Source: Oikopleura dioica
Taxonomy: Eukaryota; Animalia; Chordata
Length of the DNA stretch: 64,000 nucleotides
NCBI GenBank assembly: GCA_907165135.1
Contig: OU015567.1
Span: 2,666,001 to 2,730,000, forward strand
Direction: 5' to 3'
The translations under genes and the position numbers were made by a program. Below the pieces are notes generated by a model. That model ran no database searches and had not been told where the DNA came from. It saw only the letters and a list, made by a program, of their open reading frames with translations. This document shows, in pieces, positions 42,810-64,000 of this stretch (position 1 is the stretch's first letter; each line of letters begins with the position of its first letter).

Positions 42810-43066
42810 CTTTCTCTCTTTCACAAAAACCTTCAAATACCCTCTTTTTCAAGCTCTCAAGCCCACTTATAAATTTTCCGAACAAAGCCCCTGCGTGACT
42901 TTTTCACACATCGTTGGGAAACCTCTTCTCTTTCATTTTGATTTCGTTGAAGGCAAATAGTCATTTTATAATATCATTTCATAATTTACAAATGAGTTTA
43001 TTCACAGTTTTCTGAAAAATGAAGAAATAATGCATCGGTTTCATCTTGTACTCTTCCTTGATTTCA

Positions 43067-57394: not shown

Positions 57395-57968
57395 TTTCTC
57401 TATTTTTCTGAGCTGCGACTTCTCCTCCTCCTTTTTTTCGCTGTTTTTCTCATTTTCAAACTTGGCAAGTTCGTTGATTTGATTAATTAGCTCGAGTGCT
57501 TTTTGAAGTTGTCGTCCATTTGATCTTGCGTATTTACGTCAGCCCTTTCCCGTTTTCAGCCTTTTTTTGAGTCTGTCGATCCTAAAATCGACTATCTTCA
57601 TCAATCATCATAAAAATAAGTCGACAATCTTTGGCCAATCAAACTAAAAATAAAACAAAAAAGATGCATTATGAGATTTCGCGCAAAACGTATGTTTAAC
57701 CTTAGCTTTGAAAATATAAAGAAAAATCTTTTGTTTTGATTTCGCGCCAAGCGTAAAAAAAATTCGCCCGGACAATTATTTTTTTCGAAGATTTGGCGAG
57801 TATCAATGTCAGTTTACGAGAAAGTTCAGAAGTGAAAAGGAGCTTAGATTTGATTTTTGGGCGATAAATTGAATCGTAAAATCGCCGCTCGTAATTCTCC
57901 AGTGACGAAATGAGAAGCCAGAGAGGAGAGAAAAGTTGATAGCTTAAACGCTTTCCGAAAAAAAACAG

Positions 57969-60900
57969 ATGAAGAGAAAATCGCTGCTGGATTTTCTCAT
58001 CGCTCTGGCGATTGGGTAAGTTGTATTTTTGAAGACCCAGGGTCCCAAGTTCTTCATCTTCAGATTTCTCATTGGCGACGTCTTGCAAGCATACCTCAAG
58101 CAAAAACGCTGCCTTCCCGAGCTCATCCGCGCCCGTCTCGAGTCAAAAGCCAAGCTTCGATTTCAACCCTCAAATTTTGACCTCCAAGAAGCTCCAGAAG
58201 TTGACTTTGGCATTTCAAACTCACAATCATCTTCTGAAGAAAATAATTTTGATCGAATCCGGCAAGAAATTGGGGGAAAGAGAAAGAAACGAGTTTTTAT
58301 TGCTATTCACTCAACGCCTGATTATTTGCTTACTCGTGGCCAGGAAATGCTCCAAAAAGGAATTTTCTAGTCTTTAGTTGTATCATCATCCCATTGGCAT
58401 TCAAAACAAACCCTTTTTCGAGCTTTTAAACAGGCAATAAAAGACACCTGGCTCCAAGAAATCGACCCTCGAATCGCAACCGTCCGTTTTATCTCCTCCC
58501 CCGTCCCAGGTTTCCCGACTCTAACCCTCCCTGGCGTCGACGATTACGCCTACCCGCCGCAGAAAAAATCATTCAAGCTCTATGCATACTTCAACTCCAT
58601 CGCCGACGACTACGACTGGTTCATCCGCGTCGACGACGATCTCCATCTTCAGTTCGATCTTCTTATTCAATTTTTGAACAAAATAAACCCGGACGAGCCG
58701 CATTACATTGGAGGAACTGGATTTGGAAGAAATGCTGATGATTATATTCCTCATGGCACGGCTTTTTGCATGGGCGGCTCTGGTGTCATCTTTTCTCATA
58801 AACTTATCAGAAATTTGAGACCCTATCTGACGACATGTATAAAGGTATCATGGAAGCATTCTCCATATTCCGTATCTACATAAGAGTTTCTTAGAATTGT
58901 CAACATAACGACAGATTGAGAAAAATTATCCAACAAAATTTGCTTGTAGAGTTATGCTTTTTTACTCAAAATTCTAGAACCTGATGACCGAACACGAAGA
59001 TGTAGAAGTTGGCCGCTGCATTTGGACTCATTTGAACATGGACTGTACCAAATCTTACGAAACCAACGCAATCCTCCATCAAAACTGGAAAAAGCATGTT
59101 GCACCTGGCGAAATCGGCTACAAAAACGACATCGACGCCGAACTCGACCTCGACGACAAAATTCTCCGGAGCGCGATCACGCTACATGCTGTCAAAAATC
59201 CGTCTTCTCAAATTTCCGTCCGAATGAGAATTCTGCGACATCGAGGAGAACTTATGTTCAACAGGACTCAGGAACTGCAGAAAATGATCAAGAGCTCGCA
59301 CGGGCGAATGAAAGAGCAGATGAATGGGTGTATTTGGGATTATGTGAAGAACATCGATACGAAATACACGACAAGTTTGTTCAGTTTGGATCCGATTCCG
59401 CAGCTGAAATTGGTTGAGCCGTTTTTGACTGCGATTCGACAGCTGAAATATGTGAAGAAGGACATGACTCTCAATCACATGCTCTATCAATGCGTAACAA
59501 GGTAATCGTATGAAGTATGGATTTATTATCACGGTTAATATTTGTAAAAGGCAGTACTATTTGATTCATCAATATAAAATAGTTTTTATTGAAGGAGGAA
59601 ATGCATGCACAACAATTTGATATGCTCACGATTCATTTCAAGACAAAATTATCTTCATCAGTAGTCTGATATTTTCAGCATACGTTCAATTCACTTATAA
59701 TTCTGGATGACTCTAAAGTTTCATTTAAAAATCAAATCTTGCAACTTCTGATATTGAATCTCTAAGCGATTCTTCGTTTATATCTACAAAAAATCAATCC
59801 TCCCCCCTGCTTGGTTTCGATTTTTGATAGTCTTGATTTGGCCCCCTTTCAAGCGTTAAATTTAATTCGGTATTGATTGGCATACAAATCCATCTTCTTC
59901 TAAAACTTGGCTGATACAAGGGCATTTTGGGCCTTTTTTTTGACAATTCTTCAAGCAGTTTGCATGCCACCTTAGATAAATGACGAAATACGGAAAGTTT
60001 CGGTATTTGAATTTATTTGATCATCCTTTTCAAGAAATCTGAAAAATTAAGAGTATGTGCATATTTGATTGTCTGATTATCATCAGATTCAATTAGAATA
60101 CTTTTATCGCCACCGCGATAGCCAAAATACCCACTATTATCGTGATGCTCAGTGGTAAATAAGTATAAATCTTCAATATTCTGCTGTCAGATCTAAACTG
60201 ATCTTCAAACGATATCAATTTTGAATTAAGTTTGCTTATGTTCCAACTATAATTGTCAATTTGATTTATCAAATTATTCATTCTTTCTTCAAATGAAGCC
60301 ATAAGTAAAGCTTGGCTCTCAATTTGACGCATTTTTTCAAGATTGATGTTTTCAATCAGCTCATCATGTTTGTTTTTCATTTCGAGCTGCTCCTGTTTTA
60401 TCTTCGTCAGCTCGGCTTTAATGAGTTGAAGCTTGCCTTCAATAATCTTGTCGGTCGCCGATTCAATTATCCCTTGAATTGCTTGATTTTCACTCTCAAT
60501 TGTCATCAATTCCACTTTTTCTTCGAACGCATTTGTTCTAAGATTGTGATTTTCGACTTGATTCTCAAAATCCGCCACTTTTTCAATGAGTTCTTCATTT
60601 TTCTTTTTCAGCTGGTATTGTTCTTCCTCGTAATTGCCTATCTTGGTCCTGTAGAATTGAAGTTTGCTCTCGATAATCATTTCGATCTCTGCCTTTGAAA
60701 GGTTTTGAGATTCATGAGAACGCGAGTCGTTTTCTCTGTCATATGTTACGATGCTTTCAGAGTATTTCGAATTTTGCGACATTTCTCAAAAAATTATTTT
60801 CGTCTTTATAAATTATTAATTGAACAGAGCAGTAGTCTTAGCTTCAGTATTTTCCCTTCAACAAAAGTACAGTCAGATGTCAATATTTACGCTTAACAAA

Positions 60901-63508
60901 AGAGTTTGAAGAGTCTTGTATGAAATAATTGCCCTTTTTCCACACACGCGATATTGAAGACCGCCATTGCGAGTTCTTAAATCAAATTTCTAGCGACATG
61001 AAGGCCTATTTACGATCCTTTTACGAGCTGTCTCGCTGGCATTTGACGATGTTTTCTCAAAAAATCTCGTCCTCATCCTTTTTTCGCGAGCCAACGCCTC
61101 TTAAAATCGACTTGGAGAAGAAAGCGCAAAGATCTGTTACTTTAATTGTACCGCTTTTTGGCCGAATGGACAATTTCAAACGCTTCCTTGGTGTTTTCAA
61201 AACTCTGACAGAAACAGACGATGATCTCAATCTAATTGTTTCACTCTCTGGAACGCCTGAAGAGCGATTTTCTTTGATCGACGTTATTCAGTCAATTTTA
61301 CCGACGACCTCGTATCAACGAGCCGTGAAGGTGATCACGTGCAATATTCCGTTCAAGAAGGCCGATTGTCTTCAAAAAGGAATCGATCTGTTGAAGGGGG
61401 AAGATTTGTTCTTCGTTTACGATGTGGACCTGATTATTGATCAAGGTTTCTTGAGGAGGATTCGAGCTGTGACCGAGTCGGAAGTTTACTTTCCAGTTTT
61501 GCTTAGTCAATTCGAAGCGTCGAAGAAAAATGGACCAGGGAACGGTTGACACGCGCTTTTTGCATTCTTTTCTAAATTGCAATTCTTTGAACAAGTCTCA
61601 ACCATATTAAAAGAGGTGACAGAAACGAACGGCTTCTGGCGAACCTGGGGTGTTGGTCCTGTAGCCATGACAAAGAAAACCTACGACTCATCAGATCGCT
61701 ACAATCAAACCATCTCTGGCTGGGGAAATGAAGATACTGAGTTGTACGAGAACTTCATCACCAAAAAGATAAAATTTTCCCGCTCCCGCGACGCTGGAAT
61801 CTTTCACCCCTGGCATGCGAAGAATTGCGAAGGCCTGCCCAAAGAAACAACGCAGTATTCTGCTTGTGTCAAGGTCAATTTGGAACACAGGATGAATTTG
61901 AAGAAGATGGGAGATATTCACCTGAAAAACTCGAATAAATTCTTGGAGTTTTTGGAGACGGATCAGATGATTGTCTCGCCTCCCATGCCTATCAACAGGA
62001 AAAAAGCGGTGCTGGTAAGCGAGAATATTCTCTTAGTTTTACTTTCAAGTATTGAATATTTTTAATTGATAGAGGATTAATTGGATTTTCCGAATGGATG
62101 ATTCTTTTCAAAATTGCAATACTTTGATAATATTAAATGAAAGAAAAAAGACGGCAGTATATAATCGTTTTTGTAGCTCCTGACGTTTGGAAAGTCTGGT
62201 GATGACTTTATCGGTGAGATCTTCAATTCGCACGAAGAAGCGTTCTACATCCACGAACCCCTGCATCCGCTCTACAAGCTCGGTTTCAAAAGCAGCTCCG
62301 TCATTCCCCGACTCAACCTTCTCGGCAACCAGCTCAGCTGCAACTTCGAGGATCAATACGACCAGCGCCTCTCCTGGGCAAAATACTCGCAAGACATCAC
62401 CGCCGACCAAAAACTCGACCAACACGGCAACTTTCCTTTTCGAAGCAAACATCGAAAGCTCTGCGCTCCGCCCTTCTGCCATTTGGATCTTTCCGACGAT
62501 TTGAAAAAGTGTGAAAGTGTTTGTCCTCCTGCGAATGTTGAGCAGCTCAAATCAAGCTGCGAGCCCTTGGTTACGGTGGCTAAGGTTATCAGATTTGTGG
62601 AAATTGAGAAGATAAAGAGCATGGCCGTGAGGATGAACCTTGACTTGAAGATAATGTTTTTGACCAGAGATCCTCGGGGTATTTTGGAATCAAGGAAGAG
62701 TTCAAAAACACTTAAAAATTATAAGTTACAAACCGATTTAGCGAATTTTCATTGAGAAGAAAATATGAAAGCATATTCTTCGATCAATGATTAAAGGTTT
62801 TCAAATTAAGGAATCTGCATCGAGCTAACTCTCATAGATTTAGTACCAGAGTTTCGCTCGGCTAGTAAAAATAAAATTCGTTTATGTGTAATTAAAAAGA
62901 AATTTATGATTTCTTTTAATTTTTAATCGAAATAAAATTTGAGCTCTTTGAAGACTCACAAAAACAACAGGCAACTTTGGCCCACTAGTCGCTACCGATG
63001 ATAAAATAAATTCGATGGATTTCGTCTGCAAGCACACAGAAAAAATCCTCAGTCAAATTCAAAACGACCCTTGGCTGAGCTCCCGATCGCATATTATCCG
63101 ATATGAAGACTTTGTGATGAATAGAGGAATTGAAACTACACAAATTCTGAGACATTCTGGATTGGGTTCGGACTCGAAGGTCAAGGCTTACATTGATGGG
63201 TTGAATGTTGATCAGAAAAGTGTCAACAGCTGGATGGAAAATTTGCAATCAAGGAAGAGTTCTCGATCACTCATCGACGATGAGCATTGTCATAAAAAAG
63301 CTTTATGGGGTTTTTCTTTTAAAAGATCCCTTTCGATCAATTCTAGAGCTCGTCAAACAGCGCTGTTGCAAAAATCCAGCAAATGTGCGAGTCACCAATG
63401 CGGCGCCTCGGCTACCTGCCCGTCACTTTCCGACCTACCTCGACTGAACTTGGCGGCAACGACAACATTGACTCGTTCAGTTTCGAAGGAAACACCTATC
63501 TTGTCTAA
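57969..63508 (+). CDS. CHSY1: Chondroitin synthase (CHSY-type, two GT domains) fused in frame to a C-terminal carbohydrate 6-O-sulfotransferase-like domain
   Basis: Type II anchor; YPPQKKSF, RVDDD, CMGGSG, HEDVEVGRC; IVPL, YDVD, VYFP, GFWR, GWGNED; GT-AG intron 62015-62176 joins KKAVL to LLTFGKSG..F.GEIF; then FYIHEP, RDPRGILESR, RYEDF, IQQMCESPMRRLGY. The symbol names the family; exact orthology is not established. Confidence 0.85.
60093..60782 (-). CDS. Intronless coiled-coil protein with C-terminal transmembrane tail, nested antisense in a synthase intron
   Basis: 229-aa ORF, heptad-rich, ending LPLSITIIVGILAIAVAIKVF; lies inside intron 59502-60993. Confidence 0.7.
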   Translation of the reverse strand: MSQNSKYSESIVTYDRENDSRSHESQNLSKAEIEMIIESKLQFYRTKIGNYEEEQYQLKKKNEELIEKVADFENQVENHNLRTNAFEEKVELMTIESENQAIQGIIESATDKIIEGKLQLIKAELTKIKQEQLEMKNKHDELIENINLEKMRQIESQALLMASFEERMNNLINQIDNYSWNISKLNSKLISFEDQFRSDSRILKIYTYLPLSITIIVGILAIAVAIKVF

Positions 63509-63602
63509 GGCTACAACTGTTTGTATTCTTTTATTGCCGAATAATAATAATAATAAACTTCCCTACTACTAAAAGCATGCAATAGAACTTGTTCAATGAA
63601 TC

Positions 63603-64000
63603 TCATGGAAGATTGTTATCTTTTGGCCCTTCTGGAGACTTTTCTGGTTCTTCAGGGATAGTTGTGATTGGTGTTACTGATAGAGTTGTTTCGTAATCAG
63701 GAGCAGGATCTTCAGGAAATTCTAGCGTAAGTAAGTACTGGAAAAAGATAATCATTACCGTTGAAAGATGGCTCGTCGCGCAGTCGTGGGAGGATGTTGA
63801 TAACAGCGCCACCAACAGTTGTTTGGTTATTTGCAGGAGTATTGAGCTGAGATTCCGCCATCGGAGCATTACCAACAGCATTATCTTTCTGGGTACAAAG
63901 CTTGTTTAACTTCACCGCTAGTATCGCAAGTAGAAGAACGCCACCTACGGAGCCGAAAGCTACGATGATATCCCTAAGTATGCTTCGGAATTGTTCATCG
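63603..64000 (-). CDS. 3' part of a single-pass membrane protein running off the window end
   Basis: TM IIVAFGSVGGVLLLAILAV; intron near 63730-63757; tail PAPDYETT; stop 63603. Confidence 0.6.

What the first reader, a model, noticed from the sequence alone, without database searches (positions are those of the whole stretch)
57969..63508. Chondroitin synthase fused to a carbohydrate sulfotransferase in one polypeptide
Seen: the CHSY C-terminal exon ends ...PINRKKAVL|GTAAGC (62014) and a TTTTTGTAG acceptor (62176) resumes in phase with LLTFGKSGDDFIGEIFNSHEEAFYIHEP. The joined KKAVLLLTFGKSG reproduces the first strand and PAPS loop of CHST1-7-type 6-O-sulfotransferases (RxHVLxLxxxRSG), so the domain start straddles the junction, and the sulfotransferase part has no start codon or membrane anchor of its own. 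Established: in vertebrates CHSY/CHPF polymerases and CHSTs are separate genes; NDST and DSEL are the familiar Golgi fusions with a sulfotransferase domain. Inference: a polymerise-and-sulfate enzyme that could make a lineage-specific sulfated glycan. Read-through of the donor would stop at 62065, giving a possible synthase-only isoform.
Basis: partly seen in the sequence, partly recalled or inferred. Interest (0 to 1): 0.85.

Follow-up and report, generated by a model that had tools for sequence, protein, structure and literature searches.

The report
Chondroitin synthase fused to sulfotransferase-like domain
An Oikopleura-type tunicate genome encodes one 1055-residue Golgi protein that joins a complete chondroitin synthase to a carbohydrate-sulfotransferase-like domain; a very divergent sister lineage keeps the fusion, but the domain's sulfate-donor site is remodelled, so it may not sulfate.

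Summary
Nine exons (57969-63508, + strand) join in frame into an intact 1055-aa ORF. It has an N-terminal signal anchor, a CHSY3-like two-domain chondroitin synthase with both DXD motifs, a 38-aa linker and a CHST1-7-type sulfotransferase-like domain.

The start of that domain straddles intron 6 (62015-62176). The 9 residues before the donor fit the family profile (p about 4e-4). A stand-alone O. dioica paralogue has a phase-0 intron at the same alignment position.

Two metagenome contigs carry a highly diverged orthologue: synonymous sites are saturated and protein identity is 63-83% by region. It has the same junction, split by a 50-nt GT-AG intron that is not a multiple of 3. Neither lineage has an in-frame ATG for the first 148 domain residues, and the O. 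dioica spliced leader has no ATG. An operon or two-gene reading therefore fails.

No fusion appeared among the 270 listed sulfotransferase relatives. Junction-spanning RNA reads could not be obtained.

The PAPS 5' loop, invariant RSGS[ST]F in relatives, is KSGDD[FY] in both lineages. A conserved TxRxS motif is deleted, and the invariant 3'-site Ser is Glu in the orthologue. The fold stays under purifying selection. "Polymerise-and-sulfate" is therefore unproven; a non-catalytic or altered domain, as in DSEL, is more likely.

The parts
57969..58015 (+). Exon 1: ATG and the first part of the N-terminal signal anchor (MKRKSLLDFLIALAIG...). AACAG lies directly before the ATG.
   Evidence: The orthologue starts MKRKATLDFFIAL.
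58064..58343 (+). Exon 2: rest of the anchor and the stem. It ends at a GA-AG intron (58344-58433).
   Evidence: The reading frame closes only with this non-canonical donor.
58434..58844 (+). Exon 3: Fringe-like (beta-3 transferase) domain with the DDD motif at 58632-58640.
   Evidence: Pfam Fringe, E = 8e-10. Best solved relative is CHSY3, E = 8e-27.
58978..59501 (+). Exon 4: start of the CHGN region.
   Evidence: Pfam CHGN, E = 1.6e-17.
60994..61544 (+). Exon 5: CHGN / beta-4-GalNAc-transferase domain with the DVD motif at 61421-61429.
   Evidence: Pfam CHGN, E = 5.9e-18. CHSY3 match with the DVDL region aligned.
61614..62014 (+). Exon 6, a chimeric exon: end of the CHGN domain (GWGNED), a 38-aa linker, and a last stretch ...PINRKKAVL (61988-62014) homologous to the 3' end of a sulfotransferase first exon.
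   Evidence: Pfam CHGN reaches profile position 505 of 512. Junction profile score 9.16 bits. Paralogue intron at KRKVIL|IFTF.
62015..62176 (+). Intron 6 (162 nt, GTAAGC...TTTTTGTAG, phase 0): the fusion junction. In-frame stop at 62063-62065 if the intron is retained.
   Evidence: In the orthologue this intron is 50 nt, GTAAG...TTTCAG, with an unrelated sequence.
62177..62699 (+). Exon 7: sulfotransferase-like domain, N-terminal 174 residues. The 5'-PSB loop KSGDDF lies at 62192-62209 and the 3'-PB motif RDPRGILESR at 62666-62695.
   Evidence: phmmer, 377 relatives, best 52% identity. Loop comparison.
62971..63253 (+). Exon 8: sulfotransferase-like domain, middle part (RYED). It ends at a GA-AG intron (63254-63360).
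   Evidence: BLASTP to relatives. The same GA donor context is conserved in the orthologue.
63361..63508 (+). Exon 9: C-terminal part of the domain (…QQMCESPMRRLGYLP…) and the stop codon.
   Evidence: The orthologue ends with the same …FEGNTYLV.

Best explanation
This is one gene, conserved in at least two deeply diverged Oikopleura dioica-type lineages. It encodes a type-II Golgi membrane protein of 1055 aa. The parts, in order, are an N-terminal signal anchor, a complete CHSY1/3-type chondroitin synthase with both DXD motifs, a short linker, and a C-terminal domain derived from a CHST1-7-type carbohydrate 6-O-sulfotransferase.

The fusion arose when the end of the synthase reading frame was joined in frame to the last few codons of the first exon of a neighbouring or duplicated sulfotransferase. 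That event removed the sulfotransferase's own start codon, anchor and stem, and kept its first intron, which is now intron 6. These steps are shown or directly implied by the sequences.

The rest is inferred. The synthase half polymerises chondroitin. The sulfotransferase-like half keeps its fold, its cysteines and most family residues. Its canonical PAPS site has been remodelled: the 5' loop reads KSGDD, a TxRxS motif is deleted, and the 3'-site Ser is variable. It therefore most likely no longer works as an ordinary PAPS-dependent sulfotransferase. It probably serves as a tethered non-catalytic module, for example holding the nascent chain or recruiting active sulfotransferase paralogues. 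The activity-less sulfotransferase domain of DSEL is a parallel.
For: Gene model:
- The nine exons give an intact 1055-aa ORF.
- Fringe-like and CHGN domains are found by Pfam, and the best solved relative is CHSY3. The DDD, DVD and GWGNED motifs are present in the window and in the orthologue.

Sulfotransferase-like domain:
- There are 377 relatives by phmmer, named carbohydrate sulfotransferase 1/3/4/5/6-like by their sources.
- Pfam Sulfotransfer_3 scores above its cut-off on the orthologue's exon.
- An AlphaFold model (pLDDT 86.8) matches only PAPS-dependent sulfotransferases in the PDB.

Junction:
- The 9 residues before the donor match the family profile, p about 4e-4.
- The stand-alone paralogue P0001 (O. 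dioica assembly GCA_000209535.1) has a phase-0 intron at the homologous KRKVIL|IFTF.
- The orthologous contigs L003 and L004 have ...MPINKKKAVL|50-nt GT-AG intron|LLTFGKSGDDY. Their sulfotransferase frame has no ATG upstream, and retaining the intron shifts the frame.

Selection:
- Third codon positions are only 44-53% identical and dS is saturated, yet amino-acid identity is 63-83% by region. dN is 0.13 for exon 7 and 0.14 for the linker.

Trans-splicing:
- The O. dioica spliced leader contains no ATG (PMC6883708).

Remodelled PAPS site:
- R744K and S747D occur at positions that are 100% invariant in 163 relatives. S/T748D is conserved in both lineages, with a synonymous GAT/GAC difference.
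- S910, also 100% invariant, is Glu in the orthologue.
- The TxRxS motif is deleted and WR reads WM or WK.

Precedent:
- DSEL has a predicted C-terminal O-sulfotransferase domain with no detected activity (PMC9957132).
Against: No RNA read across 62014/62177 was seen. The four RNA runs tried laid no read at all on this stretch, which is no test either way.

The role of the altered residues in PAPS binding is inferred from other sulfotransferase families. No close relative has a solved structure by sequence search. Lys is the normal 5'-loop residue in many active sulfotransferases.

RDPR, K874 and R877 are kept, and the window keeps S910, so some PAPS or PAP binding may survive. Strong purifying selection is also what an active enzyme would show.
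Confidence: 0.6

Rival explanations
1. The fusion is real and the sulfotransferase domain is active. The protein polymerises chondroitin and sulfates it, probably at GalNAc C-6, in one polypeptide. The KSGDD loop would be an unusual but working PAPS site.
For: The fusion evidence is the same as for the best explanation. In addition:
- 29-31 of 35 family-conserved columns are kept in the window, including RDPR, K874, R877 and all cysteines.
- Exon 7 has the second-lowest dN of the regions tested (0.13), after CHSY exon 3 at 0.05.
- Lys replaces Arg conservatively.
- CHST3 and CHST7 of this family are chondroitin 6-O-sulfotransferases (established knowledge).
Against: Two acidic residues replace the hydroxyl residues of the phosphate-binding loop. 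Those positions never vary in 110-163 relatives. The TxRxS motif is deleted, and the invariant 3'-site Ser is Glu in the orthologue. These changes cluster on the cofactor site rather than on the fold.
Confidence: 0.3
2. There are two transcription units: a synthase gene that ends by read-through at 62065, and a downstream sulfotransferase gene that is trans-spliced at 62177 (an operon) or is a decaying relic that lost its first exon.
For: - O. dioica operons have intercistronic gaps of at most about 60 bp, and a single spliced leader is added at AG acceptors (PMC7986045).
- The orthologue's 50-nt gap contains AATAAA-like strings, and the window's contains ATTAAA.
- No annotated fused protein was found in the protein collections.
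Against: - Neither lineage has an in-frame ATG before residue 887, and the spliced leader has no ATG. The first 148 domain residues could therefore not be translated from a separate mRNA.
- Those residues are nevertheless 83% identical between lineages whose synonymous sites are saturated. That excludes a relic.
- The first beta-strand is completed only by the upstream exon.
- A separate product would have no signal anchor.
Confidence: 0.06

Closest known systems
Vertebrate CHSY1/CHSY3 (chondroitin sulfate synthases; solved CHSY3-CHPF complexes 9q8z and 9o4g)
   Same: Type-II anchor, an N-terminal Fringe-like beta-3 domain with DDD, and a C-terminal CHGN/GT7 domain with DVD and a WGxED-type motif. 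CHSY3 is the best PDB sequence match for both domains.
   Different: About 360 extra C-terminal residues form a linker and a sulfotransferase-like domain. Known CHSY and CHPF proteins end after the CHGN domain.
CHST1-7 family (Gal/GalNAc/GlcNAc 6-O-sulfotransferases, including chondroitin 6-O-sulfotransferases CHST3 and CHST7)
   Same: Clear sequence homology and a sulfotransferase fold. RDPR, the conserved cysteines, EP and RYED are kept.
   Different: It has no anchor or stem of its own. The 5'-PSB loop reads KSGDD[FY] instead of the invariant RSGS[ST]F. The TxRxS motif is deleted, and the 3'-PB Ser is variable between the two lineages.
O. dioica stand-alone paralogue P0001 (FN653080, GCA_000209535.1)
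   Same: It is the closest relative found, at 52% identity over exon 7, and has a phase-0 intron at the same place in the first beta-strand.
   Different: It has its own Met, membrane anchor and acidic stem, a canonical RSGSTF loop, and no synthase upstream within the 10 kb fetched.
DSEL / DS-epimerase 2, and NDST
   Same: Both are Golgi glycosaminoglycan enzymes that carry a C-terminal sulfotransferase domain on the same polypeptide. For DSEL no sulfotransferase activity has been detected (PMC9957132), which parallels the remodelled site here.
   Different: The N-terminal partner is an epimerase (DSEL) or a deacetylase (NDST), not a polymerase. Their sulfotransferase domains belong to other subfamilies, and the NDST domain is active (established knowledge).

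Membership tests
CHSY-type chondroitin synthase (Pfam CHGN PF05679 plus a Fringe-like domain) | N-terminal type-II signal anchor | tested here: met
   MKRK followed by a hydrophobic stretch of about 20 residues, read from the sequence. It is conserved in the orthologue. No dedicated membrane-segment predictor was run.
CHSY-type chondroitin synthase (Pfam CHGN PF05679 plus a Fringe-like domain) | N-terminal beta-3 transferase domain with a DXD motif | tested here: met
   Pfam Fringe, E = 8e-10. CHSY3 match, E = 8e-27. VDDD at residues 175-178 in both lineages.
CHSY-type chondroitin synthase (Pfam CHGN PF05679 plus a Fringe-like domain) | C-terminal CHGN/GT7 domain with a DXD motif (absent in CHPF-type partners) | tested here: met
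   CHGN is found on three exons at E = 1e-14 to 1e-18 and at E = 1e-37 on the orthologue. DVD at 564-566 and GWGNED are conserved.
CHSY-type chondroitin synthase (Pfam CHGN PF05679 plus a Fringe-like domain) | GlcA and GalNAc transferase activity | not testable with these tools
   This needs an enzyme assay.
CHST1-7-type carbohydrate 6-O-sulfotransferase | Sequence homology to the family | tested here: met
   377 phmmer hits, 57 of them at E <= 1e-10. Sources name the relatives carbohydrate sulfotransferase 1/3/4/5/6-like. PF13469 scores 29.8 bits against a cut-off of 27 on the orthologue's exon.
CHST1-7-type carbohydrate 6-O-sulfotransferase | Sulfotransferase fold with a strand-loop-helix at the 5'-PSB site | tested here: met
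   The model has pLDDT 86.8. Residues E2-4, loop 5-9 and H10-17 form the strand-loop-helix. All top PDB matches are PAPS-dependent sulfotransferases.
CHST1-7-type carbohydrate 6-O-sulfotransferase | 5'-phosphosulfate-binding loop RSGS[ST]F | tested here: not met
   The loop is KSGDDF in the window and KSGDDY in the orthologue. Arg and the first Ser are 100% invariant in 163 relatives.
CHST1-7-type carbohydrate 6-O-sulfotransferase | 3'-phosphate-binding motif RDPR...SR | tested here: inconclusive
   The window has RDPRGILESR, which is intact. The orthologue has RDPRAILEER, where the invariant Ser is Glu.
CHST1-7-type carbohydrate 6-O-sulfotransferase | C-terminal TxRxS......WR motif | tested here: not met
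   There is a 12-column gap in both lineages, and WR reads WM or WK.
CHST1-7-type carbohydrate 6-O-sulfotransferase | Own N-terminal signal anchor and stem | tested here: not met
   There is no in-frame Met before residue 887 of the fusion. The anchor is supplied by the synthase.
Bifunctional Golgi glycosaminoglycan enzymes with an appended sulfotransferase domain (NDST, DSEL) | Two glycosaminoglycan-pathway domains on one translated polypeptide | tested here: inconclusive
   Comparative genomics supports this strongly. No junction-spanning RNA or protein evidence was obtained.

The most novel reading that the evidence does not exclude
The appended domain is a repurposed sulfotransferase fold that no longer uses PAPS in the ordinary way. 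Selection would keep it as a chain-binding or processivity module, or as a docking site that brings active sulfotransferase paralogues to the polymerase. That would be a hard-wired glycosaminoglycan-synthesis complex (a "GAGosome") that shapes a larvacean-specific glycosaminoglycan, possibly for the house-secreting epithelium.
Probability: 0.3. Interest if true: 0.8.

Novelty: new variant of a known kind. Interest (0 to 1): 0.62.

Why it matters
Glycosaminoglycan polymerisation and sulfation are normally done by separate Golgi enzymes, and their coordination (the "GAGosome" idea) is still debated. A naturally fused polymerase plus sulfotransferase fold, kept by selection across lineages whose synonymous sites are saturated, is a natural experiment on that coupling.

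The specific remodelling of the PAPS site makes it a candidate pseudo-sulfotransferase next to DSEL, whose own sulfotransferase domain is still unexplained. In O. dioica, glycosaminoglycan synthesis and sulfation genes are among the top-expressed genes in the house-producing epithelium (bioRxiv 10.64898/2026.03.31.715263). The protein could therefore bear on house or matrix chemistry.

It is also a clean example of a gene fusion that kept an ancestral intron as its seam.

Tried and rejected
1. RNA reads. Four RNA runs of the same species label were laid on 57850-63700 (5851 letters) and gave 0 reads in all bins. This is no test: the runs probably come from another cryptic lineage.

2. Word-indexed protein searches.
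- Exons 6 and 7 alone gave one fragment each, with no junction information. The length filter excludes long fusions.
- A profile search with a 646-aa first sequence (candidate lengths 355-1130 aa) listed 120 of its 331 hits. All 120 carry sulfotransferase Pfam domains only, and none carries CHGN.

3. BLASTP of the 150 listed phmmer representatives against the window's synthase exons found no similarity.

4. A PDB sequence search with exon 7 found no hit at E <= 10.

5. The 5' end of the Tara metatranscriptome contig L002 (paralogue P0002) has an in-frame stop just before the loop, so it is uninformative.

6. An alternative first exon or ATG inside intron 6 was looked for. The ATGs there are out of frame and stop quickly.

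7. Intron 6 was tested as a transposon. It has only one weak inverted repeat and no other copy in the window.

8. Canonical GT donors were tried for introns 2 and 8. None is in phase, and GA-AG gives a gapless fit to relatives and is conserved in the orthologue.

9. Paper searches for an Oikopleura chondroitin enzyme or a chondroitin synthase-sulfotransferase fusion found nothing relevant.


Full report
**Observation.** The region 57969-63508 holds a multi-exon gene on the + strand of a eukaryotic genome with very short introns.
- I built a nine-exon model: 57969-58015, 58064-58343, 58434-58844, 58978-59501, 60994-61544, 61614-62014, 62177-62699, 62971-63253 and 63361-63508. It gives one uninterrupted ORF of 1055 codons plus a stop.
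- Six introns are GT-AG. Introns 2 and 8 close the frame only as GA-AG.
- The sulfotransferase frame opens immediately after the TAG of the acceptor. Its first in-frame Met is residue 887 of the fusion, 148 residues into the domain.

**What the two halves are.**
- Pfam finds Fringe-like and CHGN (PF05679) matches on exons 3-6.
- Against solved structures, both transferase domains match human chondroitin sulfate synthase 3 best (9q8z_B, 9o4g_A). CHPF/CHSY2 matches far more weakly.
- Both DXD motifs (VDDD, DVD) and GWGNED are present, so the synthase half looks like a complete, dual-activity CHSY1/3-type enzyme.
- Exon 7 alone has no Pfam hit and no PDB sequence hit.
- An exhaustive phmmer search of 1.84 billion representatives gives 377 relatives for exon 7. 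A profile search returns proteins that their sources call carbohydrate sulfotransferase 1/3/4/5/6-like.
- The orthologue's single large sulfotransferase exon passes the Pfam Sulfotransfer_3 cut-off.
- Its AlphaFold model (pLDDT 86.8) matches only PAPS-dependent sulfotransferases in the PDB.

**Organism.**
- The best relative of exon 7 (P0001, 52% identity) is encoded on FN653080 of assembly GCA_000209535.1, the assembly used for Oikopleura dioica in PMC7986045.
- Introns of 48-133 nt and GA-AG introns fit that genus (my knowledge). Earlier notes of this scan also call the genome Oikopleura-like.
- Runs that carry the same species label as the window hold the orthologous contig at about 0.9 of its words. 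That contig differs from the window at about half of third codon positions.
- This fits the deeply diverged cryptic species described for O. dioica (PMC11067885).

**Is the fusion real?** Four independent lines say yes.
- *Domain start across the intron.* The 9 residues encoded just before the donor (PINRKKAVL) score 9.16 bits against the family's own columns upstream of the PAPS loop. Only 0.037% of all stop-free six-frame 9-mers of the window do as well, none in the synthase part reaches it, and it is far ahead of the other 122 stop-free 9-mers that end before a GT in the gene.
- *Paralogue intron.* P0001 is a stand-alone type-II protein with its own Met, anchor and acidic stem. Its gene has a phase-0 intron exactly at ...KRKVIL|IFTFMRSGSTF, the position homologous to ...RKKAVL|LLTFGKSGDDF. 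The tail of the "synthase" exon is therefore the remnant of a sulfotransferase first exon, and intron 6 is the sulfotransferase's ancestral first intron. This is the signature of an in-frame fusion that deleted the intergenic region and the sulfotransferase's N-terminus.
- *Orthologue.* A scan of metagenome contigs found two loci, L003 and L004, from two different metagenomes. They carry the orthologue with all parts in the same order. The junction reads ...MPINKKKAVL|GTAAG...TTTCAG|LLTFGKSGDDY, with a 50-nt intron whose sequence is unrelated to the window's 162-nt intron. It is not a multiple of three, has stops on read-through, and has no ATG upstream in the sulfotransferase frame.
- *Selection.* Third-position identity is 0.44-0.53 and dS is not computable (saturated) for most regions. 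Amino-acid identity is 70% for the synthase C-terminal half, 77% for the linker and remnant, 83% for sulfotransferase exon 7 and 63% for exon 8. dN is 0.05-0.26. The linker, the seam and the Met-less first 148 residues of the domain are therefore all translated and constrained.

**Introns elsewhere have turned over.**
- Window introns 5 and 7 are absent from the orthologue.
- The orthologue has an extra intron in exon 4.
- The 1.5-kb intron 4 with its nested gene is about 37 nt in the orthologue.
- The seam intron is nevertheless kept.

**The operon rival.**
- O. dioica has many operons with gaps of at most about 60 bp, resolved by a single spliced leader (PMC7986045). The 50-nt gap in the orthologue and its AATAAA-like strings make this rival worth stating.
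- It fails on translation. The leader ACTCATCCC...CTAACAG has no ATG (PMC6883708).
- The first AUG of a trans-spliced mRNA would be out of frame. The first in-frame one would remove the PAPS loop and 148 conserved residues, and the product would have no signal anchor.
- I put this rival, together with "decaying relic", at about 6%.

**RNA evidence.**
It returned zero reads in every bin, including over the nested and neighbouring genes, so it is no test.
- Afterwards, six metatranscriptome or poly(A) runs from four studies were found to hold 0.53-0.64 of the words of L003:541-2626.
- The synthase part and the sulfotransferase part each make up about 46% of that stretch (coordinates), so both halves are present in each run.
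- This suggests expression, but it does not show the junction. An RNA run may also hold the stretch as DNA.

**Function of the appended domain.**
- In 110 relatives that contain the loop, the 5'-phosphosulfate-binding loop is always R[ST]GS[STK][FL].
- In alignments with 77 and 163 full-length relatives, the window keeps 31 of 35 columns conserved at >=80% and 29 of 35 conserved at >=85%.
- Thirteen columns are 100% invariant in the 163 relatives. The fusion differs at R744 (Lys) and S747 (Asp), and the next S/T is also Asp.
- Both lineages share KSGDD, with a synonymous GAT/GAC difference, so the change is old and selected.
- The orthologue additionally has Glu at the invariant Ser of RDPR...SR.
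- Both lineages lack the conserved TxRxS motif (a 12-column gap) and have WM or WK for WR.
- The cysteines, EP, K874, R877, RDPR and RYED remain.
- The model places KSGDD in the strand-loop-helix that forms the 5'-PSB site in sulfotransferases. The role of these motifs comes from established structural knowledge of the superfamily and was not tested here.

The departures fall on residues expected to contact the cofactor's phosphates, while the fold stays constrained. That pattern is what a pseudoenzyme or an enzyme with altered cofactor handling would show.

DSEL is a precedent: an epimerase with a predicted C-terminal O-sulfotransferase domain for which no activity was found (PMC9957132).

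**Novelty.**
- None of the 150 listed phmmer representatives shows similarity to the synthase exons.
- None of the 120 listed profile hits, drawn from candidates of 355-1130 aa, carries CHGN.
- Paper searches found no description of such a fusion.
- The limits are real. Only the best-scoring hits are listed, the window's own annotated protein was not seen in any collection, and InterPro architectures could not be queried.
- Earlier unchecked notes of this scan report other glycosyltransferase-sulfotransferase fusions in the same genome. If true, this is part of a wider habit of the lineage.

**Verdict.** I class this as a new variant of a known kind: a Golgi glycosaminoglycan enzyme with an appended sulfotransferase domain. 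It is real as a gene fusion with about 0.9 confidence, and its second activity is unproven and probably altered.

Noticed in passing
window 60093-60782 (- strand), inside intron 4 (59502-60993): A nested gene on the opposite strand: an intron-less 229-aa ORF, coiled-coil-like (a visual impression; no coiled-coil predictor was run), with a hydrophobic C-terminal tail. It has no significant Pfam family. The orthologue's equivalent intron is only about 37 nt, so the nested gene is specific to the window's lineage at this place.
   Followed up: partly
window 58344-58433 and 63254-63360; L003 2363-2478: Two GA-AG introns are needed to close the frame. The second keeps the same donor context (CAATCAAG|GAAGAGTTC) in the diverged orthologue, which supports real non-canonical splicing.
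   Followed up: partly
window 62688-62703 and 63247-63262 (also 43048-43063, - strand, 1 mismatch): The 16-mer AATCAAGGAAGAGTTC occurs at the donor of intron 7 and at the donor of intron 8 (0.02 copies expected by chance). Intron 7 is absent from the orthologue, which has the 16-mer only once. This hints that intron 7 was gained by copying a donor-containing segment. In the model the two copies are spliced 5 nt apart, as A|GT and G|GA.
   Followed up: partly
window 61545-61613 and 62700-62970; L003 about 300-460: There is heavy intron turnover between the two lineages within one gene: two window introns are missing in the orthologue and one orthologue intron is missing in the window. The seam intron is retained in both, and in the paralogue P0001.
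   Followed up: partly
window 57964-57971: AACAG lies directly before the ATG, and the orthologue has AACAG 15 nt upstream of its ATG. It could be a spliced-leader acceptor for the whole gene.
   Followed up: no
L002 (Tara metatranscriptome contig) 1-80: The transcript contig of paralogue P0002 has an in-frame stop 14 codons before its called Met (10 codons before the loop Arg), and that loop reads RFGSSF. It may be an unspliced 5' end, or another family member with an intron near the same place.
   Followed up: no
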